From the NCBI RefSeq assembly GCF_006345805.1, contig NW_021835935.1:1-37292 (forward strand): 37,292 bases of DNA, in the 5' to 3' direction. A program made the translations under genes and the position numbers. How positions within the stretch are numbered: position 1 is the stretch's first letter; each line of letters begins with the position of its first letter. Below are positions 1 to 27,052 of the stretch, piece after piece. Source of the DNA: Octopus sinensis. Taxonomy: Eukaryota. Below the pieces are notes generated by a model. That model did not search any database. It worked only from the letters and a program-made list of their open reading frames with translations, and was not told where the DNA came from.

Positions 1-505
1 TTCTCTTTCCATCTCTCTCTTTCACTCTTCCTCTCTCTCTCTCCATCTCTCTCTCTACCTTTCTCTGTTTCTCCCTCTCTCTTTCATCTCTCTCTATCTA
101 TCTCTATCTCTCCTCTTTCCATCTCTCTCTTTCACTCTTCCTCTCTCTCTCTCATCTTTCTCTCCATCTCTCTCTATCTATCTCTATCTCTCCTCTTTCC
201 ATCTCTCTCTTTCACTCTTCCTCTCTCTCTCTCATCTTTCTCTCCATCTCTCTCTACCTATCTCTGTTCCTCCCTCTCTCTTTCATCTCTCTCTATCTAT
301 CTCTATCTCTCCCTCTTTCCATCTCTCTCTATCTATCTCTATCTCTCCTCTTTCCATCTCTCTCTTTCACTCTTCCTCTCTCTCTCTCATCTTTCTCTCC
401 ATCTCTCTCTCTATCTATCTCTATCTCTCCCTCTTTCCATCTCTCTCTATCTCACCTCCCTCCCTCTCTCTCTTCGTCTTCCTCTCTCTCCCTTTCTCTC
501 TCTCT
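1..505. repeat. Polypyrimidine (TC)n-rich compound repeat with higher-order units
   Basis: Almost only T/C on + strand; recurring block tctatctatctctatctctcctctttccatctctctctttcactcttcc. Confidence 0.95.
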
Positions 506-540
506 GTGATAAGCATTATTATTTTTTAAAAGCAAAGTAC

Positions 541-866
541 TTTTATTTATTTTATTCATGCGCCCTTTTAAAGCCTAGCCAGGCTCATGGGCCCGGTTTC
601 CCGGTTTCCATGGTGTATGTGTTCCGCCACAGCTGGACGGGACGCCAGTCCATCGCAGCGTTACTCATGAAACAGGAAGAAAGAGTGAGAGAAAGTTGGG
701 GGCGAGAGACTACAACAGGGGTCACCACCACCCCCTGCCGGAGCCTCATGGAGCTTTTAGGTGTTCTCGATCAATAAACACACACAACGCCTGGTCTGGG
801 AGTCGAAACTGTGATCCTCCGACCGCGAGTCCGCTGCCCTAACCACTGGGCCATTGTGCCTCCATA
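541..866 (-). mobile_element. tRNA-derived SINE with Meta/V-like central domain
   Basis: Minus strand starts GGAGGCACAATGGCCCAGTGGTTAGG (A box) ... GTTTCGACTCCC (B-box-like); body has CTGCGATGGACTGGCGTCCCGTCCAG and GAAACCGGG, resembling conserved SINE central domains; (AAAT)-like tail at ~541-555. Domain assignment is from memory and needs a search. Confidence 0.7.
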
Positions 867-891
867 GAAGAAAGTACTAGAGTCACTTTAA

Positions 892-1489
892 CCCTTTTGT
901 TACTGTATTTATTTTGAGATGCTCTGTGTTTCTTTCAATTACTTTAAATATAACAAAGAATTTAGTAAAATAACTTAGTTATCATTCAGCTAGTGTTAGG
1001 AACATAAATTGTGATTAAAGTCTGGTGGAAGATTTTGATTCAAAACTTGTGAAAACAAAACATTTGTACCACAGAGCCAGAGACGGTTTCAGCCGGGTTG
1101 GTAACAAATAATAATAATAATAATAATGAAATTATTGTATACGGTGCTCAGGTGCACCACAACTTGTCAGAAAGTGTGTATAAAGCGTATGCAGTAATGT
1201 ACAAATGTCTGGAAAGCGAACAATGTATGAGTCAGATACATGCTTGCATGTGTATGGAGGGGAGAAAATCAGGTGTAGTGTTGGCGAATCTCAGGAAGCA
1301 TGGAAGTTTTAAAGGATGCAGTGCTCCGACAACTAACAACTGATGCCGGCAGTTTGTTCCATGCTTCAGCAACTCTTAGTGTGAAAAAATGTTTCCGAAA
1401 GTCATGGGAGCTGTGCTGTTTTCTGACTTTGTAAATATGTCCACGGGTGTTAGACAGGTGGAGTTTGAAAAGGTGCTCAGAGTTAAGGG
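892..1489. mobile_element. piggyBac-like MITE (TTAA TSD), right TIR interrupted by a LINE fragment
   Basis: TTAA(888-891)|CCCTTTTGTTAC ... GTAACAAA(1101-1108) [insert] AAGGG(1485-1489)|TTAA(1490-1493); the rejoined right end is the reverse complement of the left end. Confidence 0.7.
1109..1484 (-). mobile_element. 5'-truncated CR1-type LINE 3' end
   Basis: Clearly similar to 12040-12300 (e.g. ttccatgcttcagcaactct..gtgtgaa.aaatgtttccgaaagtcatgggagctgtg); (TAA)n tail at 1108-1127. Confidence 0.85.
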
Positions 1490-2017
1490 TTAATCAACTG
1501 ATGCTGGTAACTTCCGAGGTTTTTTTGCAACAAGAGACAACAGTTGTATCTTGTTCTTCGTTAAGGCCAGATGAAGGTGTAGACTTTTAATGAAAGTGGT
1601 CACTAATTTGAAATATGAAAGTGTTTATGACAAAGTCCATTAAATGCGCTTTTGAGGAGCATATGTTAATGAATATCAGCAGGCAGTTTTTAAGCAAAAC
1701 ATTGTACTTTTATTGAATTAGGAACGAGAGCTGGCAAGTAGCAAGAGGTGTGGCTGATTGGCTGGTGTATGCCAGACCACAACTGTGCTATGCTGCGACG
1801 ACACAAATAGCTTTCCTAACTCACGACAAACTCTATTACGGTGAGGAGCAGCAAACCCAGGGAATTTTGTCTTTAAAATGTGTGTGTGTGCGTGTGTGCG
1901 CACGCGTATGAATGTGTGTGTGTGTGTATACATACACATACTTATAATATATATATATATTTTTTTTCCAACGGCGGTGCATCAGCATGGCCACAGCTCT
2001 GAGCTGAAACTAGAAAA

Positions 2018-2052
<35 letters not shown>

Positions 2053-2322
2053 ACACACACGTGTCTCTCTGTGTGTGTCTGTGTGTGTGTGTGTGTATGG
2101 ATATATACTCACACACACAACGGTGAATCCACAATGGTGGATTCATTTTCTTTATTTATGGATAAACAATGCAACCAATGGTCTCATGTGAAGAGATCTT
2201 TACAATTGTTCAAGCTCATTAATTTGAATATTGCTACTTGTCTCCTTGCGCCTATATTAGAAAGGATTGCTCTTATTATTATTGTTGTTGTTGTTGTTGT
2301 TGTTGTTATTATTATTATTATT

Positions 2323-2916
2323 GAGTGAGCGAGCAGAGCATGCCATCAAAGTGACACTGGGGTAAAATATACGAAGCCCAGTATACCCATCATGACTACC
2401 CGTCTGATAAGGGTACACCAGGCACATGCATCACAACCATATGTGCGTGACATGGTGATCTCATATCAAGATAAACAGCACATGACCTTGCAGTGGAGCC
2501 CAGTTAGAATTTTCTTCATCAGATCGAGTAACCCATCCCGCTCAAAAGGTCCCTGAATAAGGGTTTTTAAGGACGTTGAACGAAACACCCATGTTTCCAA
2601 AGGTGAATTATTCAAACCCCAAAGAATCCCTCTCAACACATGGCTATGATGCTCCCCCACTACTTCTGCTCGTGATCAGAGATGCACATATCGTCAGCCA
2701 CTAAGGGACATGCTCAACTGGTTAAGGTCAAACAACTGACAAGCAATCTGTGGTATTGGCAGAATATTTGCTGTAGCCCATCTTTTTAAATAACAAGACA
2801 AAACAATGTACATGATCACACTTCCAATCAGTTAAGATCAGAAGCCATGGAGAGCCACTGCCTGGTACTGCATCAGGGCATGGCAAATCTGTGGTATTGA
2901 GCAGAAGATTTGCTGT
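2323..2916. repeat. Unclassified ~560-bp interspersed repeat, copy 1, embedded in (ATT)n
   Basis: Colinear, highly similar copy at 33165-33715; both bounded by (ATT)n; this copy ends with a short re-duplication of gcaaatctgtggtattg..cagaa.atttgctgta. Confidence 0.85.
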
Positions 2917-2947
2917 ATATTATTATTATTATTATTATCATTATTCA

Positions 2948-4078
2948 GTAGTTTTATTTTTATAGCGTGCTTTCACTTCACTACCGAGCGCAGCTCTGTG
3001 TGCCTTGGGTATGTGCTGTGATTTGTTGTGATGCTCTGATGGTTATTGTATGGAAAGTGTTCTGCGTAGGATGTGTGCAGTGCCTAGTAGTGCAATTTTC
3101 TGTATGTTATATGTGTTTGTAAGTCCTGGTGTTTTTGTTATGTATTTGTCTGAATATTTTTTTATCATGCCTAATGCACCTACTATGATAGGAATTGTTT
3201 CTGTTTTCAGATTCCACATTCTAGTTACCTCTATTTCCAGGTCTTTGTATTTTGGAGTTTCTCCATTTCTTTTAGAGACACGTTGTCATCTGCCGGTATT
3301 GATACATCAATTAGAAAGCATTTTTTTTCTTCATGATCTCTGACAACTATATCTGGTCTGTTGGCCTTAATTTCTCTATCTGTGTGTATCGGCATATCCC
3401 AGAGTATGGTTGCTTTCTCATTTTCTGTGACCTTTTCTGGTGTGTGGCCTATACCATCTTTTTTCTGTTGTTATTCCATTATGTTGGCATAGCTTCCAAT
3501 GTATGTAGCTCCAACTCTGTCATGTCTGTGAATATATTCCTTCTTAGCCAGGACTGGGCAGCTAGAGATAATATGATTTATTGTTTCTTGTCCATCTCCA
3601 CATATTCTGCAGTTACTTGTAATATTTCTTTTCATTACTGTTTTTTGTAATTTCTGGTGGGGAGGCTTTGGTCTTGTGCTGCAATTAAAAAATCCCTCTG
3701 TTTCTGCTTTGAGTCCTGAGCTTCTCAACCATTGCTGGGATTTTTCTTTGTCTATTTCTTTTTTGCGTTTAGTTTAGTGCAGTATTTACCATGAAGGGGC
3801 TTTTCTTGCCATCGTTTTATCATGGCTCGTTGCTGTTCTATTTTTAGTTTGGATTTCATTTGTTTTATAGCTTTTGTTGTTTCTTCATCATCTTCTTCTT
3901 CTTCTTCTTCTTTGTGTTTATTAGGTGTTATGAATTCTTGTTTGTATTTGTCAGCTTCCTTAAATACTGAGAACAGCTTTTTGTTTTGCTCGTGTTTTGC
4001 TGCTATCTGGATCAGTTTTCCTTCCTTCTGAAGTAGGTATTTTTGCAGTCCTATGGTGGTTATTTTTAGTAGTTTTCC
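2948..4078 (-). mobile_element. R4/Dong-like RLE LINE, 3' fragment (copy A)
   Basis: CRICGDGQETINHIISSCPVLAKKEYIHRHDRV (CCHC knuckle) followed by RLE region ending IVGALGMIKK..IQKIALLGTAHILRRTLSIQ*; flanked by (TTA)n on both sides. Confidence 0.85.
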
Positions 4079-4117
4079 AGTTTATTATTATTTATTATTT
4101 TATTATTATTATTATTA

Positions 4118-5022
4118 TTGCTCTTTATCACAGGTTTCGTTGGAGCTCCTGAGGTCTTACATGCGTAAGCGGGCTTGCTGCCTGCAGCCTACGGTACCAT
4201 GCTATCTGTTCTTTTCAGCTATCTAATACTTTCCTGATTATTCTGGCTGTGCCAAGGAGGCAAACCTTTTGTAACAGTTCTACTGGGCACTCTATTCCAA
4301 TTTCCTTCATATTCCTCTTGATGCCTTCTGACACTGTTCCCAACGACCCAACAATAATTAGCACTATCTTCACCTTCTTCATTTTCCATAACTGGGCTAT
4401 TTTGTACTTGAGAGGATTGTGTTTATCTATCTTTTTCTCTTCCTTCTTAACTATTCATGGGTCAAAGGGGCATGCAACATCAACTATATAGCATATGTGT
4501 TGCACTTTTTCCACCACCCCTAGTTCCGGTCTGTTATGCTCTAGCACCTGATCTGTTTGGATTGGGAAATCCCAGAGGATTTTGCTAGTCTCCACTCCGC
4601 CACTCTCTGCAGCTGGTGCTTATACCATGTCTTGCCTCTCTCTCTAGCCCCCACTTTTCGCAACCTTTCCAATGTAGCACTTTCACACTACTTGATTGTG
4701 TTGCCATAACTTGTAGTGGTTTTGGGCTAGTTTAGGGCATTCGATCGTGATATGGGCAATTGCTTCATCCACTCTATTGCAGATGCAATACAGCAGAGAC
4801 ACTTGCTCATTCCTAAGGTTGACCCTCCAGTTCATGGCCAAAGTTTGGTCTTGCGCTGCCAGTATAGTGCTCCCAGTCTCTTTTTTTAGGGTTCCTTTCA
4901 TCAGCCAATCCCACCTATTTTTTCCAGCAACTTCTGTTGTGGTTGCATGGAATTGATTGTGTAGTCCCTTCTTGCATAATTCTTCTTCATGTCCTTTTTG
5001 TACTAATTCCTTTGTTTTTCCT
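4118..5022 (-). mobile_element. R4/Dong-like RLE LINE, 3' fragment (copy B, different subfamily)
   Basis: KGLHNQFH..WDWLMKGTLKKETGSTILAAQDQTL..CICNRVDEAIAHITIECPKLAQ; ILWDFPIQTDQVLEHNRP; LQKVCLLGTARIIRKVLDS*; (TTA)n both sides. Confidence 0.85.
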
Positions 5023-5050
5023 TATCATTATTATTATTATTATTATCGCA

Positions 5051-5260
5051 GTGAGCTGGCAGAATCGTTAGCACACTGGATGAAATGCTTAGCGGTATTT
5101 CACCCATCGCTACATTCTGAATTCAAATTCCACCGAGGTCAACTTTGCCTTCATCCTTTCGGAGTCGATAAATTAAGTACCGGTGAAATACTGAGATCGA
5201 TGTAATCGATAAGTCCCCTACAACCAATTTTCAGGCCATGTGCCTTTAGTAGAAATGACT
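5051..5260 (+). mobile_element. tRNA-derived SINE with Nin/Deu-like domain (family B)
   Basis: GTGAGCTGGCAGAATCGTTAG head, ttcaaattcc B-box-like, GCCTTCATCCTTTCGGAGTCGATAAATTAAGTACC core; further copies at 20.8, 21.3, 31.0, 33.8 and 34.2 kb. Confidence 0.8.
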
Positions 5261-5274
5261 ATTATTATATTTAA

Positions 5275-5465
5275 TTAAAGCTCTTGGCTCTTTTGCCGGT
5301 ATGATGGAAAGTGTCAGCTGTCCACATCCAGCAGACTAAGTTGACACTTGTTTACTGGTCCTGCTTCAAGAACCCTGCATAGAATTCTTGCAGTTCCGAG
5401 TAATGCTGATTTTTGTAGGGGTTCTATCTTTGCACTCCTACCAAGCTTTCTGAGCCTTACAGTTG
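5275..5465 (-). mobile_element. R4/Dong-like LINE extreme 3' end (copy C)
   Basis: QKSALLGTARILCRVL motif on minus strand; adjacent to long (ATT)n at 5473-5638. Confidence 0.7.
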
Positions 5466-5654
5466 TACCAATCTTTATTATCATTATTATTATTATTTTA
5501 TTATTATCATTATTATTACTATTATTATTATATTATATATTATTAATATTATTATTATCATTATTATTATTATTATTATTTTATTATTATTATTATTATT
5601 ATCATATTATTAGCATTATTATTATCATTATTATCATTACCTAGATATTCAGGT

Positions 5655-5706
5655 TTTACATTGAAACTATTAGTTACGCCATAACATGGCTCTTCAGGTA
5701 ATGTAA
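5655..5706 (-). ncRNA. Degenerate type I hammerhead ribozyme in a Penelope-like remnant
   Basis: TTACATTAC CTGAAGA GCCA-TGTTA-TGGC GTAAC TAATA GTT TC AATGTAA: 7-bp stem I, 4-bp stem II, GAAA mutated to GTAA. Confidence 0.6.
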
Positions 5707-5869
5707 GATAAAGGTGATTTGTTCCACCTTATATGCTTATTCGTCAAAGAAGTGAATGAAGCAGGACTGGTGTCTTTGGAAATGGTTTACTTGATTTATG
5801 AGATGTCTGTTTTCATTCAGTACTGTGTTTACAGATTCCTGTGTCTATATTTGTTTAAACAATTCGATG

Positions 5870-6465
5870 TATGTATGTATACAGTAAGTATGTATGTATG
5901 TATGTATGTGTGTATGTGGTATGTATGTAGGTAGGTAGGGTATATGTGCATGTGTATGTATGCATGTATATATGTATGTGTGTGTAGGTAGGTATGTATG
6001 CTTGTATGTACATATGTATGTACGTATGAATGTATGTATGTTTGTAATGTAAATGTTTGTATGTAGGTGTGTGCAGGGCTGATGTGTAGGTATATGTGTG
6101 CGTATGTATGTATGTATGTATGTATGTATGTTGGTGGCTGTGTCTGGTGCAATATATATGCATGTGTGTCAGTGTGTCTGTGTGTCTGTTGAGACAGCAT
6201 TATCATTTCCATTTATTTTCGTTTGTAAGACGTGGTGTTTTCATTTGGCTTTCTGTGTCTGTGTGTCATTTTAAATAGTTTGATGTATGTGTAAGTATTT
6301 ATTCCCACCCCTCCCACACCACACATATATTTATACATAGGTGTGTGTCTATTTATCTGTCTATCTCCCTCTCTATCTATCTATTAGTCTGTCTATCTAT
6401 CTATCTATGTATCTATCTATCTATCTATCTATCTGTGTGTGTGTATATGTATATATATATATATA
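5870..6465. repeat. Compound (TATG)n/(TG)n/(TATC)n/(TA)n microsatellite
   Basis: Visible simple repeats; the HIYT/CMYV-type ORFs here are artefacts. Confidence 0.9.
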
Positions 6466-6670
6466 ACAGGAAGTTTTATGAAAATAAACAAAAGACGAAG
6501 GCAGGTGGAATACAAACAAACAACTGTATTAGTATGGCGCTCAGGAATATAAATAAAACAAGTCTTTTATGTTTCGAGCCTACGCTCTTCAACAGAAAGA
6601 TAAACAGAAAAGAAACACAGAAAGAACAAGGAGAGAAAAAAAAATGCGTGCAGAAGCTAGCGAATCAACA
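6465..6670 (-). mobile_element. Short (TA)n-embedded repeat carrying a variant minimal hammerhead motif (copy 1)
   Basis: Minus 6600-6563: TCTTT CTGTTGA AGAGC GTAG GCTC GAAAC ATA AAAGA; related copy at ~10875-11050. Confidence 0.5.
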
Positions 6671-6708
6671 TATATATATATATATATATATATAAACATA
6701 ACTGTATC

Positions 6709-6748
<40 letters not shown>

Positions 6749-7090
6749 ATTAATAGTATTTTATTAACTTTTATAGCTTTAGAATTTATGAACTGAACCA
6801 TGGTTTTAATTATTATTTTTCATCTCCCTATGTATTAGTTTTTTTTTTTTTTTTTTAAAAACTATTAGCCAAATATGTATAATATCGGTGCTTATTAATA
6901 TTAATATATACACTGATATATATTTTGTTTTATTTTGTTCTGTTTACCTTCCATTATTGTACCAATGAGTATTATATTATATAAGTGTAGCATTATGATG
7001 TATAAGTTTTTATATTTTACATTTTTATATTTTTATATTTATATGTATATGGTATATAATATATTTTTCACAATTATACACAAATTTAAT

Positions 7091-7210
7091 TTAATTCTCT
7101 GAAGAGGCCGTGGGGCATCCTTGTTAATGCCTCATTTATACCTGCCTTTATGGCTTATAGGTTAAATGAGGTATGACTGCCCTCACTGCCGAAACAGCTG
7201 TCAGTTTTGA
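7091..7210 (+). ncRNA. Type I hammerhead ribozyme with complete core and extended stem II
   Basis: CTGAAGA 7099-7105; stem II GGCCGTGGGGCA(7106-7117)/TGCCCTCACTGCC(7178-7190) plus ATGCCTCATTTA(7127-7138)/TAAATGAGGTAT(7163-7174); GAAAC 7191-7195, palindromic AGCT loop, GTC 7200-7202. Confidence 0.75.
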
Positions 7211-7430
7211 TTTAATGACATATTATATTTGAAATTTTTTATTATATCTCTTTGTCTTTTTACTTTTACTATTACTGTATATTTTGAATGCCTTTACTCA
7301 TATGTAATGGTGTATTAAAGTATTGACATTGGGTATCATCGATATTGATGTTTTATTGATTTAAGCATGTTTCTCCATTCTCTAATTTTGTAGTTATATA
7401 TATAATATATATATATATAATATATATATA

Positions 7431-7628
7431 CTCTTTTACTTTTGTTTCAGTCATTTGACTGCGGCCATGCGGAGCACCACCTTTAGTCGAGCAAATCGAC
7501 CCCGGGACTTATTTCTTTTGTCGCCCAGTACTTATTCTATCGGTCTCTTGCCGACCGCTAAGTACGGGGACATAAACACACCAGCATCGGTTGTCAGGCA
7601 ATGCTAGCGGGACAACACAGACACACAA

Positions 7629-7675
<47 letters not shown>

Positions 7676-7827
7676 TACGACAGGCTTCTTTCAGTTTCCG
7701 TCTACCAAATCCACTCACAAGCATTGGTCAGCCCGGCTATAGCAGAAGACACTTGCCCAAGATGCCACGCAGTGGGACTGAACCCAGAACCATGTGGTGT
7801 GTTAGCAAGCTACTTACCACACAGCCA
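7431..7827 (-). mobile_element. tRNA-derived CORE-like SINE (family A) with internal microsatellite
   Basis: Minus-strand head tggctgtgtggtaagtagcttgct..gggttcagtcccactgcgtggcatcttgggcaagtgtc; same architecture at 8341, 20292, 23612. Confidence 0.85.
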
Positions 7828-8159
7828 ACACACATATAAATTTTGTAAATAAAATTATAAGTGTTCACCATATACTCAGTATATCAAATAGTCTAATATT
7901 AGGGCATATAGCTCCCTTAATGATAAAACCTCACCATTTGTACAGGACTTATACACCTTACTTTTAGTCTATTTTCTATAGTTATATACAGGGAATGCTT
8001 ATAATTCTGTTTACAAAACTTCAATCACTGCTGTTTCCTAATTCATGCTAAATTCACACACATTTTATATGTTTCAGTCATCAGCCATGCTGGATCACTA
8101 TCTTAAGGAATTTTAACCCCCAACTTATCACCCAGTATTATTATAATTTTCTTTGTAAA

Positions 8160-8275
8160 GCCTGGTACTATTATCAGTCCTCTTTGCCAAACTGCCAAGC
8201 TACAGGGATGTAAATGCACCAACACCAGTAATCAAGCAGTGGTGGGGAACAAACACAGACACACAGACTTACATA
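8160..8275 (-). mobile_element. Family A SINE 3'-half fragment
   Basis: ctggtacta..tcctctttgccaaactgccaagctacagggatgtaaatgcaccaacaccagt matches the family A body. Confidence 0.6.
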
Positions 8276-8340
8276 CACAGATGTATGTTTGTGTATGTAT
8301 ATATGTGTGCATGTGTGTGTGTGTGTGTGTATAAGTAGCT

Positions 8341-8785
8341 AGGTGTAGGAGTGGCTGTGTAGTAGGTAGCTTGCTTACAAACCCACATGGTTCTGGGTTC
8401 AGTCCCACTGCATGGCACCTTGGGCAAGTATCTTCTACTATAGCCTTGGGTTGACCAAAGCCTTGTCAGTGAATTTGGTAGATGGAAATTGAAAGAAGCC
8501 CATCGTATGTATTCTTATTCGTGTAACCTCGTCCGTTTTTCCGTCCTTGTTTTTTATACATTCGAGGCTTTCTTCCAAGGAATCTAATGTGCTTGGCTTA
8601 GATTTTCCTTTGGGGCTGGCCAGATTGGAGCAATCTCAAGATTAATCAGCCGAAATTGCGATGATGATCCAGTTCTTGACTGAAGATTGAAGGCTTCGAA
8701 TGTCCCGTCCGTGTGTTTTTTGTATCGTCTTCTAAATGTTTTGCGTTCTTGTCCCAGTTTGTATTTTTTTACATATATATATGTG

Positions 8786-8842
<57 letters not shown>

Positions 8843-9045
8843 TGTGTGTCTGTGTTTGTCCCCCCAACATCGCTTGCCAACCATACTGGTGGTTTACATC
8901 CCCCATAACTTAGCAGTTTGGCAAAAGGGACCGATAAAATAAGTACTATGCTTACAAAGAATAAGTCCTGGGGTCAATTTGCTCGACTAAAGGTGGTGCT
9001 CCAGCATGGCCACATCACATACTGAAACAAGTAAAAGAGAGTATA
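8341..9045 (+). mobile_element. Family A SINE with a ~250-bp nested insert
   Basis: AGGTGTAGGAGTGGCTGTGTAG (A box), GGTTCAGTCCC (B box), CCTTGGGCAAG core, tail actgaaacaagtaaaagag; foreign sequence at ~8510-8765. Confidence 0.85.
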
Positions 9046-9069
9046 TATATATTATATATATATATATAT

Positions 9070-10765
9070 ATAAATATTATTAGAGACAAAACCACTATTT
9101 TGCAAAACAAACAAGGAAGACTTAATCACTACATAAAATTTTAAAAAAAGTCAAAAAAACCGCCACTACAATTGTTTTCTTGTCTTGATCGACAATCTAA
9201 AATATCAATATTTTAAATATAAAAATAATAATTTTAAATAATTAAAGTATTAGAAAAAATATAATATATAATCTATTTATAACCTATATATAATCCATAT
9301 ATAATCAATATATAAACATATATAAACTAAAATAAACCTATCAACAATTAATATAAAATATAAAATATAAAATATAAACAAAACAAAAAATAAACTATAT
9401 ATAACACCCATACACATATAACTAATTATATATAACCATATCTAAATACATACACTAAATCACACACCTAATATATATCCCTATACATACACATAAAAAC
9501 GTCTAGGCAACGATAAATAAATAAAATAGCTAAATACTTCAAACACAATACTTATATCATACTCCCTCACACACACATACAACCCACATTCCCGCTGCTC
9601 TAGAAACGGACATCACTTAAAATTATGAACGGAGAAATGGAATAAATGGATTAAAAATTATATTCACTTGGTAAAACGAACACTACTTAAAAATTATGAA
9701 TGAAATAATGCAATAAAACAACAACATCGCAAATAGACACAAATTACTACGATTCCTTAACAAAACTACCATATAAACCAAAACTCATAAAAACATATAA
9801 TGATAAAATCTCCCTTTACTAACTCTATAACATACCTATATAGCATCCCCCTAACCTAACATTCACACACAATACACCCACACGTAAACCACACACCCAC
9901 GACATATACAAATACCCACCCCCCACTTACCATACCTATACATACATATAAACCTCAACATATACTCCAAAACCCACTCAACCCCACACAGACAAATAAA
10001 CACATACATCCCCAAAACCTAAATAAGCAAACCCATAAACACATTCACACACAATATACATACGTAAAACACACACCCATATACATTACATACTCACCAA
10101 CTCGATATATACAACAATATTAACACATACCCACAATATTCAACACACCCACATCATACAGATAAACAAACTACACACCAAATACGCACACACTCACACA
10201 CACAATCCCACATACATAAAAACTCCAAAAAAACAACATTATTACACATAATACGATATTTAAAATACATCGTAAGTAACCAGAATATCAAAAATACACA
10301 ATATGACATAAGGAGAAATAATATCATACTTTCAAGTCAGTTTCAATTATGAATTGAAATTAAATTCTAATCCGTTAAAACATCAAACCAATTACGTTAC
10401 CATAGGAACATAACTTATGTATAAAAAGAATACGCGCTATGGAAGCAAACCTCACTTAAAATTATGAATGGAGAAATAAATATGGAATTAAAAATTATAT
10501 ACACGGTAAACCAACATTATTTTAAAAAATTATGAATGGATTCTTTTATAAAACTACCATGATAACTAAACTCACAAACATAAATGATAAAACCTCCCTT
10601 TACTAACTCTATAACATACTTATATAGCAATCACTTTAACCTATACATTCACACACCAATACACACACGTAAACCACACACCCATAACAATACAAAACAC
10701 CCACCCCACTCACACACACCCACAAGTACATATAAGCCTCAACATATACACCAAACAAAATGGAG
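9070..10765. repeat. G-depleted A/C-rich region containing a diverged ~0.84-kb-spaced direct duplication
   Basis: cacttaaaattatgaa.ggagaaat at 9617 and 10454; ctccctttactaactctataacatac at ~9810 and ~10595; no G on + strand from 9254 to 9500. Confidence 0.75.
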
Positions 10766-10874
10766 CTTTGTGATTGAATTCGGTAGGTGGAGTTACTCTG
10801 CCGTGTGTGTATGTGTGCGTATAGCTGCTCAGTGCCTCTCCGAAAGAGAGAGAGGGATATATATATATATATAG

Positions 10875-11050
10875 TTCAAATTTACAGAAAATGAAAGACA
10901 AAGACAGGTGAGGGAACAAAGCAGGTGTATTAGTTTTGATGTTTGAGAGAATATAAAAGCCTTTGATGTTTCAAGCCAATGCTCTTTGACAGAAAAGACT
11001 GAGAAAAAAAAAATGTGTAGGGATTAACAGTTCAACATAGTGAAATGACC
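10875..11050 (-). mobile_element. Short (TA)n-embedded repeat with variant hammerhead motif (copy 2)
   Basis: Minus ~10996-10961: TTTT CTGTCAA AGAGC ATTG GCTT GAAAC ATC AAAG; shares gcaggtg..tgtattagt with 6465-6670. Confidence 0.45.
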
Positions 11051-11319
11051 CTATATATATATAGATGAGTAAGCACATAAGTGCTAAACAAGGTGGGAAA
11101 AATAGTACTCGAATACTGAAGGTAGAGTAATAGGATATTTATACACCCCTGACCAGCCCAACCATTCGTGAATACAACACTGTTTATATTTTCAAAATAA
11201 GTTACCCAATCAAATTTAAATGCTTATTTGTCAAACTGGAGCATATCAAATCATATATTACATGTACCATAGCAATTTTATTCTAGTCTTGATCACAACT
11301 GTCCAACAAACGGCAAAGA

Positions 11320-11770
11320 CCGCATTAATCGCCGTGGAAGGGGTGTGATGATTTTTGTTCGATCAAATCTATCGGCAATCCCCTGTGATGATTTGAACCA
11401 ATCTCAGCAGGAAGTATTTTTCTGCAATATACACATGACCATATCAACACTTCTGCTCGGAGTCGTTTACGGACCCCCCCAAAAAAAAATTTATCGTCAA
11501 GACGAACAGATTTTTGATATCCTCAGAGCTCCTGCCAAGAAAACAGCCACGTATGTTTATATTGCGGACAACTTCAATTTCCCTGAGATTGACTGGAAGG
11601 CCTTCCGTTGGCGCAAAGTGCAGACGATTTCCTTGAACTGGTGCTGAATTCAAATTGGTCCCAAGTCGTTACCTCCCCCACAAGGGGTAACAACACTTTG
11701 GATCTGCTACTTACCGCTTCTCCTGAAACAATCATTAGTGTCACTACTGAAGAACCTTTAGGTGACTCTG
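11320..11770 (+). pseudogene. Internal APE endonuclease fragment of the CR1 family, inverted relative to the main copy
   Basis: DRINRRGRGVMIFVRSNLSAIPCDDLNQSQQEVFFCNIHMTISTLLLGVVY...FVELVLNSNWSQVVTSPTRGNNTLDLLLT..TTEEPLGDSD (frameshifted); paralogous to 14225-14675 (-). Confidence 0.9.
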
Positions 11771-12059: not shown

Positions 12060-14835
12060 CTACAACTCATCGAAAGTGTATATATAATCAGGTGTAGTTT
12101 CGACGGATTTCGAAAAGCATGAGGGCCTTAAAGGATGCAGTGTCATGGCAGTCAACAACTGACGCAGGCAGTTATTCCATGCTTCAGCAACTCTGAGTGT
12201 GAAGAAATGTTTCCGAAAGTCATGGGAGCTGTGTGTTGTTTCTGACTTTGTAGGCATGTCCACGTGTGTTAGACACATGGAGATCAAAAAGGTGTTCAGT
12301 GTTGTTATTGGTGAGGTGGTTGACAACTTTGTGGGTGTTTACCAAGTCCGTCACCAGACGCCGAGCTTCAGTGAATCCATGCCCAGGGAAACAAGGCACT
12401 CAGAATATGGTAGGTGTCTGATGGAGGGTATGCGTTTGGTTGCACGTCTCTGAACAGATTCCAGGAGGTCAATGTTCTGAGCAAGATAGGGGTTCCAAAC
12501 TGATGATGCGAATTCCAGAGCTGTATACAGTTTTAAATAGATGGCTGGAGAGCGGCTAACAAAAGTCTTGCTGAGTGATGCCAAGACACCCTCGGCCTTC
12601 TTGACAATTTTAGAGATATGCTTTGTCCAACGCAAATCACTGCTGACAGTGATGCCTAGGTCACGCTCGCAAGAGGATTTCTTGATATCAGTGTTGTGGA
12701 GGGAGTATGTGGACGCAGGGTTTTCTCCCAAAATGCATGGTGGTACACTTGTCCACAGCCAGTTTCAGTTGCCAGTCTGTGATCCATTGCTGCATTGTGC
12801 AGGTCTGATTGCAGGAAAGAGCTGTAGACAACAGGATCTGTCCTCTTGATTTCAAGGTACAGCTTGATGTCGTCTGCATATTTTAATACTGTGGCATTCT
12901 TTAAATTTGCATCTATGTCATTAATGTATGCCACAAAACAGAGGGGACCAAGGACAGATCCCTGTGGTACACCCGATGACATCATATATGGTGTAGAATG
13001 CTGTCCTAGAACTGTGACTACCTCCTTTCGGTTGAGAATGAAGGACTCAACCAGTTAAAAAGGTCATCCCTCACACCCATTGCAGAGAGTTTCACCATAA
13101 GCCTTTTGTGTGGCACAGAGTTGAAAGCCTTAGCAAAGTCAAGGTAGACAACATCCACCCATGAGCCACTGTCAGTGATCTGAGTAATGTCCTCAAGGAA
13201 CTCGACAAGCTGACCACTGCAGCTGGAGTTAGGGACAAATCCATATTGTGAGGGTCGGATGAGACTGTGTGAGCTCCAGAAGTTCCAAAGTGTTTCTCTG
13301 ACACACGATTCCATCAGTTTTGCAATACAGCTAGTGAGACTGACTGGGCAATAGTTGACAGGTGATGTGCGGTCGCCCTTCTTGAACAGAGGAATGACAC
13401 TGGCAGTTTTCCACTGTTCCGTGGAGTAGCACCATTGTTGAGACAGTACTGGAAGGAAAGTAGAGAGCTGGTGTAAAAGGAAGTACTGCCACATTTGAGA
13501 AGCAGGTATGTAACTCCATCAAGACCAGGGGAGGATAGTTGCACTTATTTTGAAGGTGACGTCGCAGCATTGCAGGTGTAAATTCCATAGTTGTTATGGA
13601 ATTTGCTGTTAGAGATGGTGAAGATGGTACATTTGACTTTCAACAGTGAATATGTTTGCATAGCACTCGGCAATGAGTTCTGCGCATTCCTTGGGGTCAT
13701 CAGTGATCTGGTTTGTGTGAGGGTTGCAAAGAGGGCCCACTGGAGAGTGAGGTCTCTGCTTCGAATGCACATATTTCCAGAAAACCTTGCTGTCAGGATT
13801 GGCTGCTATGCACTGTTCAAATTCAAGCACTGCTTTTTTTGTCACTTGCTTGAGATGGTTGGAAGATTTATTCCGCTTCTTCCTGTTGGTGTCTGATTTA
13901 TGCAACTTGTAATCCCGTTCAGCAGTTCTTTGACGTTCCTTCCTGGCAAGTCAGACCGCTGAAGTTTCCCAAATTGCACTTTTGGGGCGGGTTCTTCTTT
14001 TTCTGTTTACATGGCACTGATGCTGCACATGCTGCCCATATTGAGTCCAGGATACTCTGGAGTATAGTATTCACATCTCCAGAGTTGTAGAATTCACGCC
14101 AGTTTGGGTGCTGTAGTTCAGTGTGGTACAGGTTCCAATCTGCTCTCTTCCAATCGAAGGAAGCAGTTTGGAGATGGTTCAGGTTTTTGTTGCCCGCAAG
14201 AGCCAGATTGGCGATGATCATAGCATGATCAGAGTCACCTAGAGGTTCCTCCGTAGTGCAATTGATAACCGCTTCAGGAGTTGTGGTGAAGAGCAGGTCC
14301 AGGTGCTGTCGCCTCTTGTTGGAGAGGTGACTACTTGTGACCAGTTTGAGTCCAGTACAAGCTCAACAAAATCGTTTGCACTCTGTGGCCAATGGAAGGT
14401 TTCCCAATTGATCTCAGGATGATTGAAATCGCCTGCAATGAAAACATAAGTGGCTGTTTTCCTGGCAGCAGCTCGGAGGATATCGCAAAGCTGTGTGTCC
14501 CGATGGTAATTTGGGGGACGATAAACAACACCAAGCAGGAGTGTTGACATGGTCATACGTACGTCACAGAAAAAAACTTCTTCTTGTGATTCGTTCAAAT
14601 CGATACAAGGAATTACTGAAAAATTTGAACGAACATAGACCATCACACCACCACCACGGCGGTTAATGCGGTCCTTGCGGAAGAGGTTGTACCCAGTGAT
14701 GTTGAAAACCCCATCACAGAGTAAGGAATGCGCCCATGTTTCCGTGACAGTGATGAAGTCAGGGTCAATACTTCCAACGTAGGCGTTGAACAAATGAATT
14801 TTGTTGCACAAACTGCGAGCATTTAAGGACAACAA
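12060..14835 (-). pseudogene. CR1 ORF2 (APE endonuclease + reverse transcriptase), frameshifted
   Basis: LSLNARSLCNK..ITVTETW..GYNLFRKDRINRRGGGV; KKGDRTSPVNYCPVSLTS; QYGF; VYLDFAKAFNSVPH; SGVPQGSVLGP; KYADDIKLY; ERDLGITV; WNPY..LESVQRRATK; FFTLRVAEAWN. Confidence 0.93.
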
Positions 14836-16214: not shown

Positions 16215-17144
16215 GGCATAGTTTCGGTTGTAGTAGCACAGATTTCCGTCGATTTCCGTAAAAAACTTTTATTTTTTTACATAAGTAATGAGAGCGAAAG
16301 AGACTAAGAGGAAGCGATTTTACGACGAGAAGGTTTCTCTTTGAAATCGGCCTGTGTGTGTTTGATGGGGTGTGGGAGACAGACAGTATGTTGTGTAAGT
16401 GAAGTGCTTCTGTTAGTGTGTGTGAAGAGACAGACATACATATACACATACACCGAGTAAAAAATTACTATGAATCGGCCATACATACATCACACACACA
16501 CATACATAGATACATACACCACACACACATACATACATACATACACACACACATACTTACACACACACACACACACACATAGATACATACACACACACAC
16601 ATACATGCAGACATACATATACACATACACCGAGTAAAAAAATACACTGAATCGACCATACATACATACACACATACATACATACACATACACACACTAC
16701 ATAGATACATAAAATACACACACACACATACATGCAGACATACATATACACATACACCGAGTAAAAAATTACGATGAATCGACCATACATACATACATAC
16801 ACACACACATATACACACACACATACATAGATACATGCATACATACATATACACACATGCATACATACATATACACATACACCGAGTAAAAATCAGTTAT
16901 CTATCTCTTTCACACATTACTCTCTCTGTCTCTTCACACACACTAACAGAAGCACTTCACTTACAAACATACGTCTGTCTCCCCACACCCCATCAAACAA
17001 ACACAGGCCGACTTCAAAGAGAAAACCTTCTCGTCGTAAAATCGCTTCCTCTTAGTCTCTTTCGCTCTCATTACTTATGTAAAAAAATAAAAGTTTTTTA
17101 CGGAAATCGACGGAAATCTGTGCTACGACATGCGAAACTTCGCC
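16215..17144. mobile_element. Fold-back/MITE-like element: ~220-bp inverted repeats around a minisatellite
   Basis: gtagcacagatttccgtcgatttccgtaaaaaactttt..(16233-16440) is the reverse complement of ~16920-17126; four internal accgagtaaaaa units separated by (CA/CATA)n. Confidence 0.8.
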
Positions 17145-18660: not shown

Positions 18661-18676
18661 TTGTAGCATGTTGTCC

Positions 18677-18860
18677 CCGAACATCGCTTGACAACCGATG
18701 CTGTGTTTACCCCATCCGCTAGTGGTTCAGCAAAAGAGACTGATAGAATAAGTATTAGGCTTACAAAGAATAAATCCTGGGGTCAATATGCTCGACTAAG
18801 GTGGTGCTCCAGCATGGCTGCAGTCAAATGACTGAAACAAGTAAAGAGTAAAGTGTAAAA
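18677..18860 (+). mobile_element. Family A SINE 3' half
   Basis: catcgcttgacaaccgatgctg..gatagaataagta..ggtggtgctccagcatggctgcagtcaaatgactgaaacaag. Confidence 0.75.
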
Positions 18861-19050: not shown

Positions 19051-19712
19051 AGAATGGATGAAGATAGTTGTGTGAAAAAGCGCCATACTTAGCGGTTGAG
19101 GGACCTGTGGAAGAGGCAGACCCAGGAAAACCTGGGACGTGGTGGTGAAGCATGACCTTCGAACTTTAGGTCTCACTGAGGAAATGACTAGAGACCGAGA
19201 CCTTTGGAAGTGTGCTGTGCGTGAGAAGACCCGGCAGGACAAGTGAGACCATAACCCGGGATGTGCCAGTCCACTTATGCATACCTTTCCTTCTGAGGAC
19301 ACAAAACTCTACTTGTGAAGACCTGTTGAGGCAAGTGAGAATCGGAATCGAAATCGATCAACATCAATGGAAATTGCAGCTGTGATACCAGTGCCAGTGA
19401 TACGTAAGAGAACCATCCGATCGTGGCCATTGCCAGCGCCGCCCTGACTGGCCTCGTGCTGGTGGCACGTAAAAAGCACCATCCATTCATGGCCATTGCC
19501 AGCCTCACCTGGCACCTGTGCTGGTGGCACGTAAAAAGCACCCACTACACTTACGGAGTGGCTGGCGTTAGGAAGGGCATCCAGCCGCAGAAACACTGCC
19601 AGATCAGACAGGAGCCTGGTGCAGCCTTCTGGCTTCCCAGACCCCAGTTGAACCGTCCAACCCATGCTAGCATGGAAAGCGGATGCTAAACGATGATGAT
19701 GATGATGATGAT
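19051..19712 (+). mobile_element. 5'-truncated RTE LINE (ORF C-terminus + 3' UTR + (GAT)n tail)
   Basis: RMDEDSCVKK..GRGRPRKTWDVVVKHDLRTLGLTEEMTRDRDLWKCAVREKTRQDK*; UTR ends acccatgctagcatggaaagcggatgctaaacgatgatgat. Confidence 0.85.
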
Positions 19713-20291: not shown

Positions 20292-20690
20292 AGGCGCAGG
20301 AGTGGCTGTGTGGTAAGTAGCTTGCTAACCAACCACACGGTTGCGGGTTCAGTCCCACTGCGTGGCATCTTGAGCAAGTGTCTTCTGCTATAGCCCCGGG
20401 CCGACCAATGCCTTGTGAGTGGATTTGGTAGACGGAAACTGAAAGAAGCCTGTCGTATATATGTATATATATATATATGTATGCGTGTGTTTGTGTTCAA
20501 ACGTTTGTGTGTCTGTGTTTGTCCCCCTAGCATTGCTTGACAACCGATGCTGGTGTATTTAGGTCCCCCGTCACTTAGCGGTTCGGCAAAAAGAGACCGA
20601 TAGAATAAGTACTAAAAGGTGGTGCTCCAGCATGGCCGCAGTCAAATGACTGAAACAAGTAAAAGAGTAAAAGAGAGAGAGTAAAGAGTA
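20292..20690 (+). mobile_element. Family A SINE, essentially full length
   Basis: AGGCGCAGGAGTGGCTGTGTGGTAAG..GGGTTCAGTCCC..CTTGAGCAAG..(TA/TG)n..actgaaacaagtaaaagag. Confidence 0.9.
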
Positions 20691-23069: not shown

Positions 23070-23827
23070 GGAATTAGACATATTCGTTGCTGTAGCAGAA
23101 GCATTGTGAACTGCTATGAAGGCAAAGGAGATGCCTAAGAGAAAGGAAATTATAGATGAGTTCGATATCAGATTATGAAGGTCATGAAGAGTCATAGCAC
23201 AATTTATTCATGACAGAGTAGACCTAGATGAGATGTGGTTTGGCTTTGTGCCTGGCAGTGGTATCTCAGATGCAATCTTCCTGGTCAGGCAACTGTAGGA
23301 GAAACATTTGGCTTAACATTAAACCACTATTCCTGACATTTGTTGACCTGGAGAAGGGCTTTGACAGGGTACCCAAGTAACTTAGTGGTTACTAAGGAAA
23401 CTGGGTGTAGATGAGAATGGTTTGTGAAAGCTGTACAGGTGAGATATAAAGACGCAGACAGTAAAGTGAGAGTCAACAATGATTTTAGTGACATATTTAG
23501 TGTGAAGATAGGAGTTGGATCAAACTTTAGTCCTCAACCCTCTCCTATTTATTGTAGTCTGACGAGTCATCAGAGAGTAATTTAAGACTGGCTTTCCGTG
23601 GGAACTCCTGTATTCTTTTACTTTTTTCTTTTTATCTGTTTCAGTCATTTGACTGTGGCCATGCCGGCGCAACACCTTAAAAGGGTTTTAGTCAAATGGA
23701 TCATGATTTTTTTTTTTGTAAGTCCAGTACTTATTCTATTGGCCTCTTTTGTCAAACCGCTAAGTTACAAGGACATAAACACATCAGCATTGGTTGTCAA
23801 GCAAAGGTGGGGGGACAAACACATAAA

Positions 23828-23919
<92 letters not shown>

Positions 23920-24270
23920 TGGCTTCTTTCGGTTTCCATCTACCAAATCCACTCACAAGGCTTTGGTCGGCCCAAGACTATAGTAGAAGACACTTGCCCA
24001 AAGTGCTGCACAGTAGGACTGAACCCTGAACCATGTGGTTGGGAAGCAAACTTCTTACCACAAAGCCACGCCTAAATGTTTATGATCTAGTTGTCACAGC
24101 TGAATCCACAGTGAAGTTAGAGAGAAAATTCCTGGCATTGAAACTAAATCTAGAATTAAAAGGTCTCACGGTAAACTTAGCAAAGACAAAGGCTTTAGTA
24201 TGCAGGAAATTAGACAAGACCCTGGTCTATTCAAGAAGATGGTTTTGCTCAATATGCAGAAGAAAAGGGG
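23070..24270 (+). pseudogene. RTE reverse-transcriptase fragment split by a SINE
   Basis: IVNCYEGKGDA..EMWFGFVPG..DAIFLVRQL..TFVDLEKGFDRVP..SKVRVNND..FPWELLY [SINE] DLVVTAESTVKLERKF..KGLTVNLAKTK..WFCSICRRKG. Confidence 0.85.
23612..24072 (-). mobile_element. Family A SINE nested in RTE RT
   Basis: tttcagtcatttgactgtggccatg..(CA)n(TA)n..accaaatccactcacaagg..cttcttaccacaaagccacgcct. Confidence 0.85.
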
Positions 24271-24284
24271 TTATGTTTTGGCTT

Positions 24285-25235: not shown

Positions 25236-25323
25236 GGTGATGATAATGGTGGTGTTGATAATGATGTGTATGGGGATAGTGGTGGTGGTGGCAGCAGCAG
25301 TAGTGGTGTGGTGGTGGTGGTGG

Positions 25324-25354
<31 letters not shown>

Positions 25355-25665: not shown

Positions 25666-25667
25666 CC

Positions 25668-25702
<35 letters not shown>

Positions 25703-27000: not shown

Positions 27001-27052
<52 letters not shown>

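What the first reader, a model, noticed from the sequence alone, without database searches (positions are those of the whole stretch)
7091..7210. Intact-core hammerhead ribozyme with an unusually long (~85 nt) stem II
All conserved core nucleotides are present (CUGAAGA, GAAA, GUC at 7200-7202, predicted cut after 7202). Stem III is the minimal AC-AGCU-GU with a palindromic tetraloop, the known hallmark of dimer-cleaving Penelope-type minimal hammerheads. Stem II is not the usual short hairpin but a long multi-helix arm (about 12 bp + 12 bp + ACCT/AGGT + GCC/GGC). Stem I is weakened by two U-U mismatches. The extended arm could be a protein-binding or regulatory domain or a dsRNA-editing substrate (inference). 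This is the best candidate for a functional RNA in the window.
Basis: partly seen in the sequence, partly recalled or inferred. Interest (0 to 1): 0.85.

Follow-up and report, generated by a model that had tools for sequence, protein, structure and literature searches.

The report
Hammerhead ribozyme with oversized stem II
A complete self-cleaving hammerhead ribozyme motif sits alone in AT-rich, repeat-filled animal (probably octopus) DNA; it is an ordinary animal type I hammerhead except that one short hairpin is an 85-base arm, and neither activity nor function could be tested here.

Summary
Confirmed. At 7099-7202 (+) every conserved hammerhead core base is present and in register: CUGAAGA, G10.1-C11.1, GAA, A15.1-U16.1 and C17 at 7202. 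All three helices are there. The 85-nt helix II arm (33 bp, -40.7 kcal/mol, z -6.7) is the most stable non-microsatellite hairpin in the window. A relaxed hammerhead descriptor hits only this site, and 1 of 2000 shuffled windows.

Rfam reports no hammerhead at any threshold, because 79 nt replace loop 2.

Helix III (AC-AGCU-GU) is the standard animal type I arrangement, not a Penelope-specific hallmark, and it does not force dimer-only cleavage.

The window holds no Penelope ORF, no tandem partner and no second copy. The neighbours are LINE fragments and at least five SINE copies.

Three public collections gave no relative of the long arm. The scan did find a repeat family in another animal (ERZ1740055). 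Its compact hammerhead, CUGAUGAGGCC-UAAAAA-UGCCGAAACAGCUGUC, equals the window's motif minus the arm.

Best reading: a solitary, retroelement-derived type I hammerhead with an expanded loop 2. Cleavage is plausible but untested, and it probably has no function at this locus. Copy number and covariation of the arm could not be tested.

The parts
7086..7098 (+). Stem I, 5' strand (open-ended, hence type I). It pairs with 7203-7215. U-U mismatches lie at 7095, 7096 and 7090.
   Evidence: Pair list. 10 of 13 positions pair, P = 0.019 against local AT-rich 13-mers.
7099..7105 (+). Core strand C3 U4 G5 A6 A7 G8 A9 (CUGAAGA).
   Evidence: Sequence; pattern match.
7106..7190 (+). Helix II arm, 85 nt and 33 bp. 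From the core outwards: GGC/GCC (G10.1-C11.1); C7109/U7187 mismatch; 8 bp (7110-7117 with 7178-7186, U7183 bulged); internal loop 7118-7122; 19 bp (7123-7143 with 7159-7177, A7127 and U7139 bulged); apical GCC/GGC (7144-7146 with 7152-7154); loop 7147-7151; bulge 7155-7158.
   Evidence: MFE -40.7 kcal/mol, z -6.7. It is the most stable non-microsatellite 85-mer in the window. The same fold persists in a 537-nt context. The + strand RNA is 6.7 kcal/mol more stable than the - strand RNA.
7191..7193 (+). Core G12 A13 A14.
   Evidence: Sequence.
7194..7201 (+). Helix III: A15.1-U16.1 and C15.2-G16.2 closing the loop AGCU. Together they form the 8-nt palindrome ACAGCUGU, which could make an intermolecular helix III.
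   Evidence: Sequence. The cofold dimer is -100.3 kcal/mol against 2 x -46.6 for monomers. Only one other ACAGCTGT occurs in the window, at 29601, and it is unrelated.
7202..7203 (+). C17 (7202) and N1.1 (7203). The predicted self-cleavage is between them.
   Evidence: Position relative to the core under standard hammerhead numbering. Cleavage was not tested.
7203..7215 (+). Stem I, 3' strand.
6858..7394 (.). Unique AT-rich stretch (18-23% GC) that carries the motif. It is bounded by a T18 run (6839-6856) and (ATT)12 (6710-6745) on the left, and by (TA)n (7395-7430) plus a SINE copy (7431-7830) on the right. The limits of any element are undefined.
   Evidence: No target-site duplication was found. 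There is no excess structure beyond the arm.

Best explanation
This is a genuine type I hammerhead ribozyme sequence of the ordinary animal kind, the kind carried by retrozyme, satellite and Penelope-related retroelements. The usual 4-bp helix II with its small loop has been replaced by a continuous 33-bp, 85-nt hairpin.

How it would work, if the + strand is transcribed:
- The arm folds on its own and fixes helix II (shown by prediction).
- The core CUGAAGA...GAA, helix III (AC-AGCU-GU) and the A/U-rich stem I assemble the three-way junction.
- The 2'-OH of C7202 attacks its 3' phosphate, giving a 2',3'-cyclic phosphate and a 5'-OH at A7203 (inferred from the family's chemistry).

Expected activity:
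- Helix III is only 2 bp, and stem I has 2 bp before a tandem U-U.
- Loop 2 lies 33 bp away, so the usual loop 1-loop 2 contact is impossible.
- I therefore expect slow, magnesium-demanding cleavage as a monomer. Cleavage should be better when two molecules pair through ACAGCUGU into a double hammerhead (inferred).

At this locus the motif is a solitary copy, with no partner and no retrotransposon ORF within 37 kb. It is most likely a stranded or truncated insertion of a non-autonomous element, or a relic, with no host function. How the arm arose (stepwise expansion or a single insertion) is not resolved.
For: - All core positions and G10.1-C11.1 are present in register.
- Descriptor specificity is 1 in 2000 shuffles.
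- The arm has z -6.7, and it is the only complex hairpin of that stability in the window.
- Stem I is complementary at P = 0.019.
- The motif is a GC island in AT-rich flanks.
- The + strand fold is favoured over the - strand fold through G-U pairs.
- Outside the arm the motif equals a compact hammerhead of a multi-copy repeat in another animal. L046 963-1007 reads CUGAUGAGGCC-UAAAAA-UGCCGAAACAGCUGUC, including the same C/U pair at the fourth helix II position. That sequence aligns end to end with Rfam Hammerhead_1 at 28.3 bits.
- Cephalopod genomes are reported to hold hammerhead-1 loci and Penelope elements (PMC6962438).
- A 2-bp helix III with a tetraloop is the invertebrate retrozyme type (PMC7229834).
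Against: - There is only one copy, so neither conservation nor covariation of the arm could be examined.
- No Rfam hammerhead match appears even at E <= 10.
- A small custom type I model aligns only the 3' half, at E 0.23.
- The thermodynamic MFE of the monomer sequesters C3-G5 against 7195-7197. The hammerhead-compatible fold is 5.2 kcal/mol worse.
- Stem I is weak.
- There is no tandem repeat, no Penelope ORF and no target-site duplication to tie the motif to a mobile element.
- The match to L046 was partly forced by the search pattern. Only the GCC/UGC helix II bases were free.
- Transcription and cleavage are untested.
Confidence: 0.65

Rival explanations
1. A dead relic. A normal compact type I hammerhead (GGCC-loop-UGCC) was hit by the insertion of a foldback or MITE-like palindromic element in loop 2. 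The long 'stem II' is then just the inserted element's inverted repeats, not part of a working ribozyme design.
For: - The motif minus 7110-7186 is a textbook compact hammerhead, the same as L046.
- The arm begins and ends with an 8-9 nt inverted repeat, GUGGGGCA...UGCCCUCAC.
- The window is saturated with mobile elements.
- Insertions anywhere else in the ribozyme would have destroyed the motif, so only loop insertions stay recognisable.
Against: - No second copy of the arm exists in the window, and none in the collections scanned. Those two-ended patterns would have found only copies of the arm still set inside such a hammerhead; a viral-contig scan with an arm-only pattern was considered and not run.
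- No target-site duplication is evident around the arm.
- At 77-79 nt it would be very short for a MITE.
- The inserted helix stacks without a break on helix II, which would still leave an active ribozyme. This rival therefore differs from the best explanation in origin more than in mechanism.
Confidence: 0.2
2. Chance. A genomic foldback or miRNA-like hairpin happens to be flanked by hammerhead-like core strings.
For: - It is a single copy with a weak A/U stem I and no Rfam hit.
- The genome is probably gigabase-sized and many windows were read. PMC3088659 warns that consensus matches arise by chance in large databases.
- The relaxed pattern alone gave about 30 unrelated hits in the metagenome collection.
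Against: - The descriptor hits 1 of 2000 shuffled windows, and that hit has no stable arm.
- This is the only complex hairpin of its stability in 37 kb.
- By my own estimate, the flanks required (6 + 4 fixed bases, G-C closure, A-U, H17, stem I) have a joint probability of roughly 1e-8 per hairpin.
- None of the roughly 30 unrelated metagenome hits satisfied helix II plus stem I.
Confidence: 0.08
3. A domesticated or regulated ribozyme. The long double-stranded arm would be a functional module, for example a protein or ADAR binding site or a small-RNA precursor, that controls or exploits self-cleavage of a host transcript.
For: - The arm is strikingly stable and favours the + strand.
- It is a GC island in AT-rich DNA, which would fit constraint.
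- Co-opted hammerheads with a very large helix are known. The Clec2 discontinuous hammerhead has 150-1500 nt in helix I (PMC6155905).
Against: - No host gene, exon or conserved context was identified around it. The neighbours are microsatellites, SINEs and LINE fragments.
- Only sub-threshold generic hairpin matches to miRNA families were found.
- There is no orthologue, expression or editing data.
Confidence: 0.07

Closest known systems
Canonical animal type I hammerhead (Rfam RF00163 Hammerhead_1): Schistosoma Sm-alpha, newt/axolotl satellite, coral and mussel non-LTR retrozymes
   Same: - Identical core and open helix I.
- G10.1-C11.1.
- Helix III of 2 bp plus a palindromic tetraloop.
- Embedded in low-GC DNA.
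- Can form a double hammerhead through the palindrome.
   Different: - Helix II is 33 bp / 85 nt instead of about 4 bp plus a loop.
- No loop 1-loop 2 tertiary contact is possible.
- Stem I is interrupted after 2 bp.
- It is not in a tandem array.
- It is not detected by the Rfam model.
Minimal hammerheads of Penelope-like elements (Cervera & de la Pena 2014, PMC4209133)
   Same: - Short or absent palindromic helix III.
- Helix II longer than in canonical motifs.
- Weak helix I.
- Low activity expected, helped by dimers.
- Lives in invertebrate genomes rich in retroelements.
   Different: - Those have 6-8 bp in helix II, not 33.
- They have an unpaired base between A9 and G10.1, absent here.
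- They sit in pseudo-LTRs next to an RT/GIY-YIG ORF, and none is in the window.
Repeat family found here in ENA assembly ERZ1740055 (unidentified animal), e.g. L046 963-1007 and about 38 longer copies
   Same: - Same CUGA(U/A)GAGGCC start.
- Same (U)GCC-GAAAC-AGCU-GUC end, including the C/U fourth pair of helix II.
- The distance between the two core strands is 85-86 nt in most copies.
   Different: - Its extra ~66 nt sit inside helix III, between two copies of CAGCUG. They make a long intramolecular helix III, not a long helix II.
- The interior sequence is unrelated, and there is no similarity to the window.
- It is multi-copy, within a dispersed repeat of about 350-400 nt.
Discontinuous hammerhead in mammalian Clec2 3' UTRs
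   Same: A hammerhead that tolerates a very large insertion in one helix.
   Different: - That one is type III, with 150-1500 nt in helix I.
- It lies in a conserved mRNA context.

Membership tests
Hammerhead ribozyme, type I (Rfam RF00163, clan CL00010) | Conserved core: C3 U4 G5 A6 N7 G8 A9, G12 A13 A14, A15.1-U16.1, H17. | tested here: met
   CUGAAGA at 7099-7105, GAA at 7191-7193, A7194-U7201, C7202.
Hammerhead ribozyme, type I (Rfam RF00163, clan CL00010) | Three helices around the core, with a G10.1-C11.1 closing pair. Helices II and III are closed and helix I is open. | tested here: met
   Helix III is only 2 bp. Helix I pairs 10 of 13 positions, with U-U mismatches.
Hammerhead ribozyme, type I (Rfam RF00163, clan CL00010) | Score at or above the family's gathering threshold (34 bits) with the covariance model. 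| tested here: not met
   No hammerhead-family match at gathering threshold, nor at E <= 10 on 141, 301 or (E <= 1) 37,292 bases. The custom type I model R1 aligns only 7166-7202 (12.5 bits, E 0.23). The 79-nt insertion exceeds what these models can span, so this is a limit of the model as much as of the sequence.
Hammerhead ribozyme, type I (Rfam RF00163, clan CL00010) | Loop 1-loop 2 (or bulge-loop) tertiary contact that gives fast cleavage at physiological Mg2+. | tested here: not met
   By sequence geometry only. The helix II loop is 33 bp from the core and stem I has no closing loop. A contact through internal loops cannot be excluded.
Hammerhead ribozyme, type I (Rfam RF00163, clan CL00010) | Site-specific self-cleavage 3' of position 17. 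| not testable with these tools
   This needs in vitro transcription or RNA end mapping.
Penelope-like element minimal hammerhead | Located in a pseudo-LTR flanking an RT + GIY-YIG ORF. | tested here: not met
   The only RT is a LINE (Exo_endo_phos + RVT_1) on the opposite strand at 12351-14835. Other ORF pieces give a sub-cutoff match to zf-RVT (25.7 bits against a cut-off of 27.5) or nothing, and there is no GIY-YIG. A truncated solo copy would also look like this.
Penelope-like element minimal hammerhead | An unpaired nucleotide between A9 and G10.1, and helix III absent or a tiny palindrome. | tested here: inconclusive
   The palindromic short helix III is present. The unpaired base is absent (A7105 is followed directly by G7106, which pairs with C7190).
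Penelope-like element minimal hammerhead | Large intragenomic families with covariation. | not testable with these tools
   There is one copy in the window. The source genome is not in the searchable collections.
Animal non-LTR retrozyme | Short (about 170-400 bp) tandem repeats, each with a type I hammerhead. | tested here: not met
   No tandem unit and no second hammerhead or half-hammerhead within 37 kb.
Animal non-LTR retrozyme | Low GC content of the repeat, and expression as linear and circular RNA. | tested here: inconclusive
   The flanks are 18-23% GC, which fits. Expression is not testable here. The flanks show no excess structure.

The most novel reading that the evidence does not exclude
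Cephalopod genomes may carry a so far undescribed class of type I hammerheads in which loop 2 is replaced by a long, conserved double-stranded arm. The arm would be a functional module, for instance a binding or editing platform for the very active cephalopod ADAR system, or a small-RNA precursor. Self-cleavage would then be coupled to another RNA pathway. Such motifs would be invisible to Rfam and to standard hammerhead descriptors.
Probability: 0.07. Interest if true: 0.7.

Novelty: new variant of a known kind. Interest (0 to 1): 0.4.

Why it matters
Hammerheads are routinely catalogued with covariance models and descriptors that assume short helices. This motif has a perfect core and a canonical base of helix II, yet Rfam reports nothing for it at any threshold, because 79 nt sit where loop 2 should be. 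If the source genome holds a family of such copies, current counts of animal hammerheads are underestimates. The arm would then offer a natural test of how far helix II can be extended once the loop-loop contact is lost. If it is a lone relic, it is simply one more retroelement-derived hammerhead in a repeat-rich invertebrate genome.

Tried and rejected
**Rfam.** I searched at the gathering threshold, and at E <= 10 on three nested ranges. No hammerhead family matched. All whole-window matches are sub-threshold microsatellite or miRNA artefacts.

**Custom type I model.** It was built from the Rfam consensus line and L046. It aligned only the 3' half of the motif, so it cannot bridge the arm.

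**Second copy in the window.** Sensitive self-BLAST and searches allowing 3 mismatches with both halves found none.

**Collection scans, strict pattern** (CTGANGAGGC-N60-90-GCCGAAACAGCTGTC):
- 0 hits in metagenome contigs and 0 in viral contigs.
- 2 hits in prokaryotic genomes. Both lie in the same ABC-transporter gene (LSGGQ signature) of two Acidobacteriota MAGs, so they are coincidence, not ribozymes.

**Collection scans, looser pattern:**
- One viral hit with no helix II or stem I.
- 71 metagenome loci. About 30 are unrelated sequences with no hammerhead architecture (apparently coding; not checked by ORF or domain search). About 41 belong to one repeat family of another animal. None shares sequence with the window.

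**Reaching cephalopod DNA through proteins:**
- The LINE endonuclease ORF found only 7 distant hits on contigs of about 1.4-3.4 kb.
- An ORF ending in the motif and ten other window ORFs are not in the collection.
- No ORF spans the motif, so a protein search could not stand in for a DNA search.

**Penelope ORF.** I looked among all ORFs of at least 90 aa, and among sequence-complex stop-to-stop pieces of at least 55 aa in 1-11400. Only LINE-type domains turned up.

**Other checks:**
- No target-site duplications around 6790-7445.
- No rod-like structure in the 537-nt unique stretch. The excess stability comes from the arm alone.
- A literature string search for the SINE sequence returned nothing.

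Full report
**Setting.** The window is eukaryotic, AT-rich and crowded with microsatellites.
- It holds at least five copies of one SINE: 7431-7830, 8352-9039, 18669-18848, 20303-20667 and 23637-24068.
- It holds LINE fragments. An Exo_endo_phos + RVT_1 element lies on the minus strand at 12351-14835. Three LINE 3' ends lie at 3046-5532 on the minus strand, one with a weak zf-RVT match.
- From memory, the SINE sequence is the abundant tRNA-derived SINE of octopus genomes. No tool could verify that, so 'octopus' is an inference.

On the + strand the layout is as follows.
- 7099-7105 is CUGAAGA (C3-A9).
- 7106-7108 (GGC) pairs with 7188-7190 (GCC), giving the conserved G10.1-C11.1.
- 7191-7193 is G12 A13 A14.
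- A7194-U7201 and C7195-G7200 close the loop AGCU.
- C7202 is position 17.
- 7203-7215 pairs back to 7086-7098.
- Between the GGC and GCC, RNAfold draws a single continuous arm: a C7109/U7187 mismatch, 8 bp, a 5-nt one-sided loop, 19 bp with two bulges, and an apical GCC/GGC hairpin. The total is 33 bp in 85 nt.

**Is it more than chance?**
- A relaxed, generic type I descriptor was used. It required CUGANGA, at least 3 bp in helix II closed by G-C, up to 110 nt enclosed, GAAA, a minimal helix III, U-H, and at least 4 of 6 stem I pairs.
- It finds this site and nothing else in the window.
- It finds one site in 2000 dinucleotide shuffles, and that site's arm folds at only -4.9 kcal/mol.
- The real arm folds at -40.7 kcal/mol against -21.3 +/- 2.9 for shuffles, z -6.7.
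- In a scan of every 85-mer on both strands, it is the only non-microsatellite sequence at or below -40 kcal/mol.
- The stem I complementarity has P = 0.019 against local AT-rich 13-mers.
- The motif is 48% GC in flanks of 18-23% GC.
- By my own estimate, the chance that a pre-existing hairpin acquires all the required flanking bases is about 1e-8. Chance is therefore unlikely even genome-wide.

**Why databases miss it.**
- Rfam gives no hammerhead match at the gathering threshold, nor at E <= 10 on 141 or 301 bases, nor at E <= 1 on the whole window.
- A small type I model was built from the Rfam consensus line and a compact relative. It aligns only 7166-7202.
- Seventy-nine nucleotides in place of loop 2 are more than these models can span.

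**What kind of hammerhead it is.**
The papers say otherwise.
- Canonical animal type I hammerheads have a 1-2 bp helix III capped by a small palindromic loop (PMC4209133).
- The Rfam type I consensus has ACGCGCGU at this place.
- A 2-bp stem with a tetraloop is described as the invertebrate retrozyme type. Cloned genomic repeats of coral and mussel retrozymes self-cleaved during transcription, kobs about 0.8 and 0.1 per min (PMC7229834).
- Penelope minimal hammerheads are reported to have a bulged base after A9, a 6-8 bp helix II and a position in the pseudo-LTR next to the RT/GIY-YIG ORF. The bulge and the ORF are absent here.
- The motif is not in a tandem array either, and no second hammerhead or half-hammerhead lies within 37 kb. 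It is a solitary copy, and its mobile-element parent, if any, cannot be named from this window.

**Related sequences.**
- A strict pattern found nothing in metagenome or viral contigs. In prokaryotic genomes it found only two coincidental matches, inside an ABC-transporter gene of two Acidobacteriota MAGs.
- A looser pattern (CTGANGAG-N58-88-CGAAACAGCTGTC) found 71 metagenome loci.
- About 30 of those are unrelated sequences, and none has a hammerhead architecture.
- About 41 come from one ENA assembly, ERZ1740055. They belong to a dispersed repeat of about 350-400 nt in an animal genome (37% GC, Ig and EGF domain ORFs) that shares no sequence with the window.
- One copy, L046 963-1007, is a compact hammerhead: GCCAUG-CUGAUGA-GGCC-UAAAAA-UGCC-GAAAC-AGCU-GUC-CAUGGC. 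It aligns end to end with Rfam Hammerhead_1 at 28.3 bits, below the gathering score of 34.
- Apart from N7 and stem I, it is the window's motif with the arm removed, down to the C/U fourth pair of helix II. Much of that identity was imposed by my pattern. Only GCC/UGC were free, so it shows that the window's core and proximal helices are those of a real, multi-copy animal hammerhead. It does not show that the two are homologous.
- In most ERZ copies about 66 extra nucleotides lie between two copies of CAGCUG. RNAalifold pairs these into a long intramolecular helix III. Large insertions at the palindrome or in the loops of this hammerhead type therefore do occur in nature.

**Mechanism and expected activity.**
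- The arm folds identically in 132-nt and 537-nt contexts. It is 6.7 kcal/mol more stable on the + strand than on the - strand because of G-U pairs.
- The monomer's thermodynamic optimum pairs C3-G5 with 7195-7197, and the hammerhead-compatible fold is 5.2 kcal/mol worse. This is usual for 2D predictions of hammerheads, but it also reflects the weak helix III.
- Two copies cofold into a domain-swapped double hammerhead. Helix III is the 8-bp ACAGCUGU duplex and stem I forms in trans. The dimer is -100.3 kcal/mol against -93.2 for two monomers.
- With loop 2 33 bp away, the loop-loop contact that gives fast cleavage at physiological magnesium (PMC3088659, PMC6155905) cannot form.
- I therefore expect minimal-type kinetics, improved by dimerisation. 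All of this is inference; cleavage was not and could not be tested.

**Rivals.**
- The arm could be a foldback element that landed in loop 2 of a normal hammerhead (about 0.2). It starts and ends with an 8-9 nt inverted repeat, but no other copy of it and no target-site duplication were found.
- Pure chance (about 0.08) is disfavoured by the statistics above.
- A domesticated, regulated ribozyme (about 0.07) has no support beyond the arm's stability and the GC contrast. No gene context was found.

**Limits.**
- The source genome is not in any searchable collection.
- No ORF overlaps the motif, so a protein search could not stand in for a DNA search.

**Verdict.** This is a real, complete type I hammerhead motif with an exceptionally long helix II. 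It is solitary, of unknown activity, and most likely derived from a retroelement. It is a structural variant of a well-known ribozyme, not a new kind of element. Interest is moderate (0.4). That would rise if a family with a conserved arm exists in the source genome.

Noticed in passing
L004-L073 (about 41 loci of ENA assembly ERZ1740055, one of ERZ1740069); e.g. L046 963-1007, L005 940-1044, L009 101-205: A dispersed repeat of about 350-400 nt in an unidentified animal genome carries a type I hammerhead. One copy is compact and nearly reaches the Rfam Hammerhead_1 threshold (28.3 vs 34 bits). Most copies have about 66 nt inserted between two CAGCUG copies, predicted to form a long intramolecular helix III (a 'monomerised dimer'). 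Most of those also carry G12-to-A and helix II changes that should kill the proximal core. Stem I shows compensatory changes: L027 has CCGUG/CACGG against the consensus CCAUG/CAUGG.
   Followed up: partly
L046 913-945: Just upstream of the compact hammerhead lies a second hammerhead-like string, CUGACGAG-GUCC-AUAUA-GGAC-GAAAUC. It has a bulged G after A9 and no helix III, which is the architecture reported for Penelope minimal hammerheads.
   Followed up: no
L001 5942-6042 and L002 3465-3565: The strict hammerhead pattern matches by coincidence inside an ABC-transporter ATP-binding gene (the ...LPKQLSGGQEQR... region) of two Acidobacteriota MAGs. This is a reminder that core-plus-palindrome strings occur in coding sequence.
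   Followed up: yes
window 7431-7830, 8352-9039, 18669-18848, 20303-20667, 23637-24068: At least five copies of one SINE in both orientations, 79-89% identical, each with an internal CA/TA microsatellite. From memory this is the common octopus tRNA-derived SINE, but ARAGORN finds no tRNA-like head.
   Followed up: partly
window 12351-14835 (-) and 11345-11647 (+): A LINE with apurinic-type endonuclease and RVT_1 domains, broken by frameshifts, plus an inverted endonuclease fragment of the same family about 700 bp away.
   Followed up: partly
window 3046-3773, 4218-5021, 5317-5532 (all -): Three 3'-terminal fragments of another LINE family, with the recurring motif ...ALLGTA(R/H)IL(R/C)(K/R)(V/T)L... 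One has a weak zf-RVT match. Long (ATT)n microsatellites occur in the same region (about 4981-5654).
   Followed up: partly
window 16215-16336 and 17023-17144: An inverted repeat of 122 nt, 96% complementary, separated by 686 nt of CA-rich microsatellite. It may be a foldback element or an inverted duplication next to the LINE 5' end.
   Followed up: no
window 19309-19665 (-), 34383-34718 (-), 24200-24871 (+): Three copies of an unclassified repeat whose ORFs share ...GKPEGCTRL...DALPNANHSV...YVPPAQVPGEAGNGH...
   Followed up: no
window 25200-29850: Several kilobases of GGT/GAT/GCT trinucleotide-rich low-complexity sequence with strong GC skew. It produces long spurious ORFs on both strands.
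   Followed up: no
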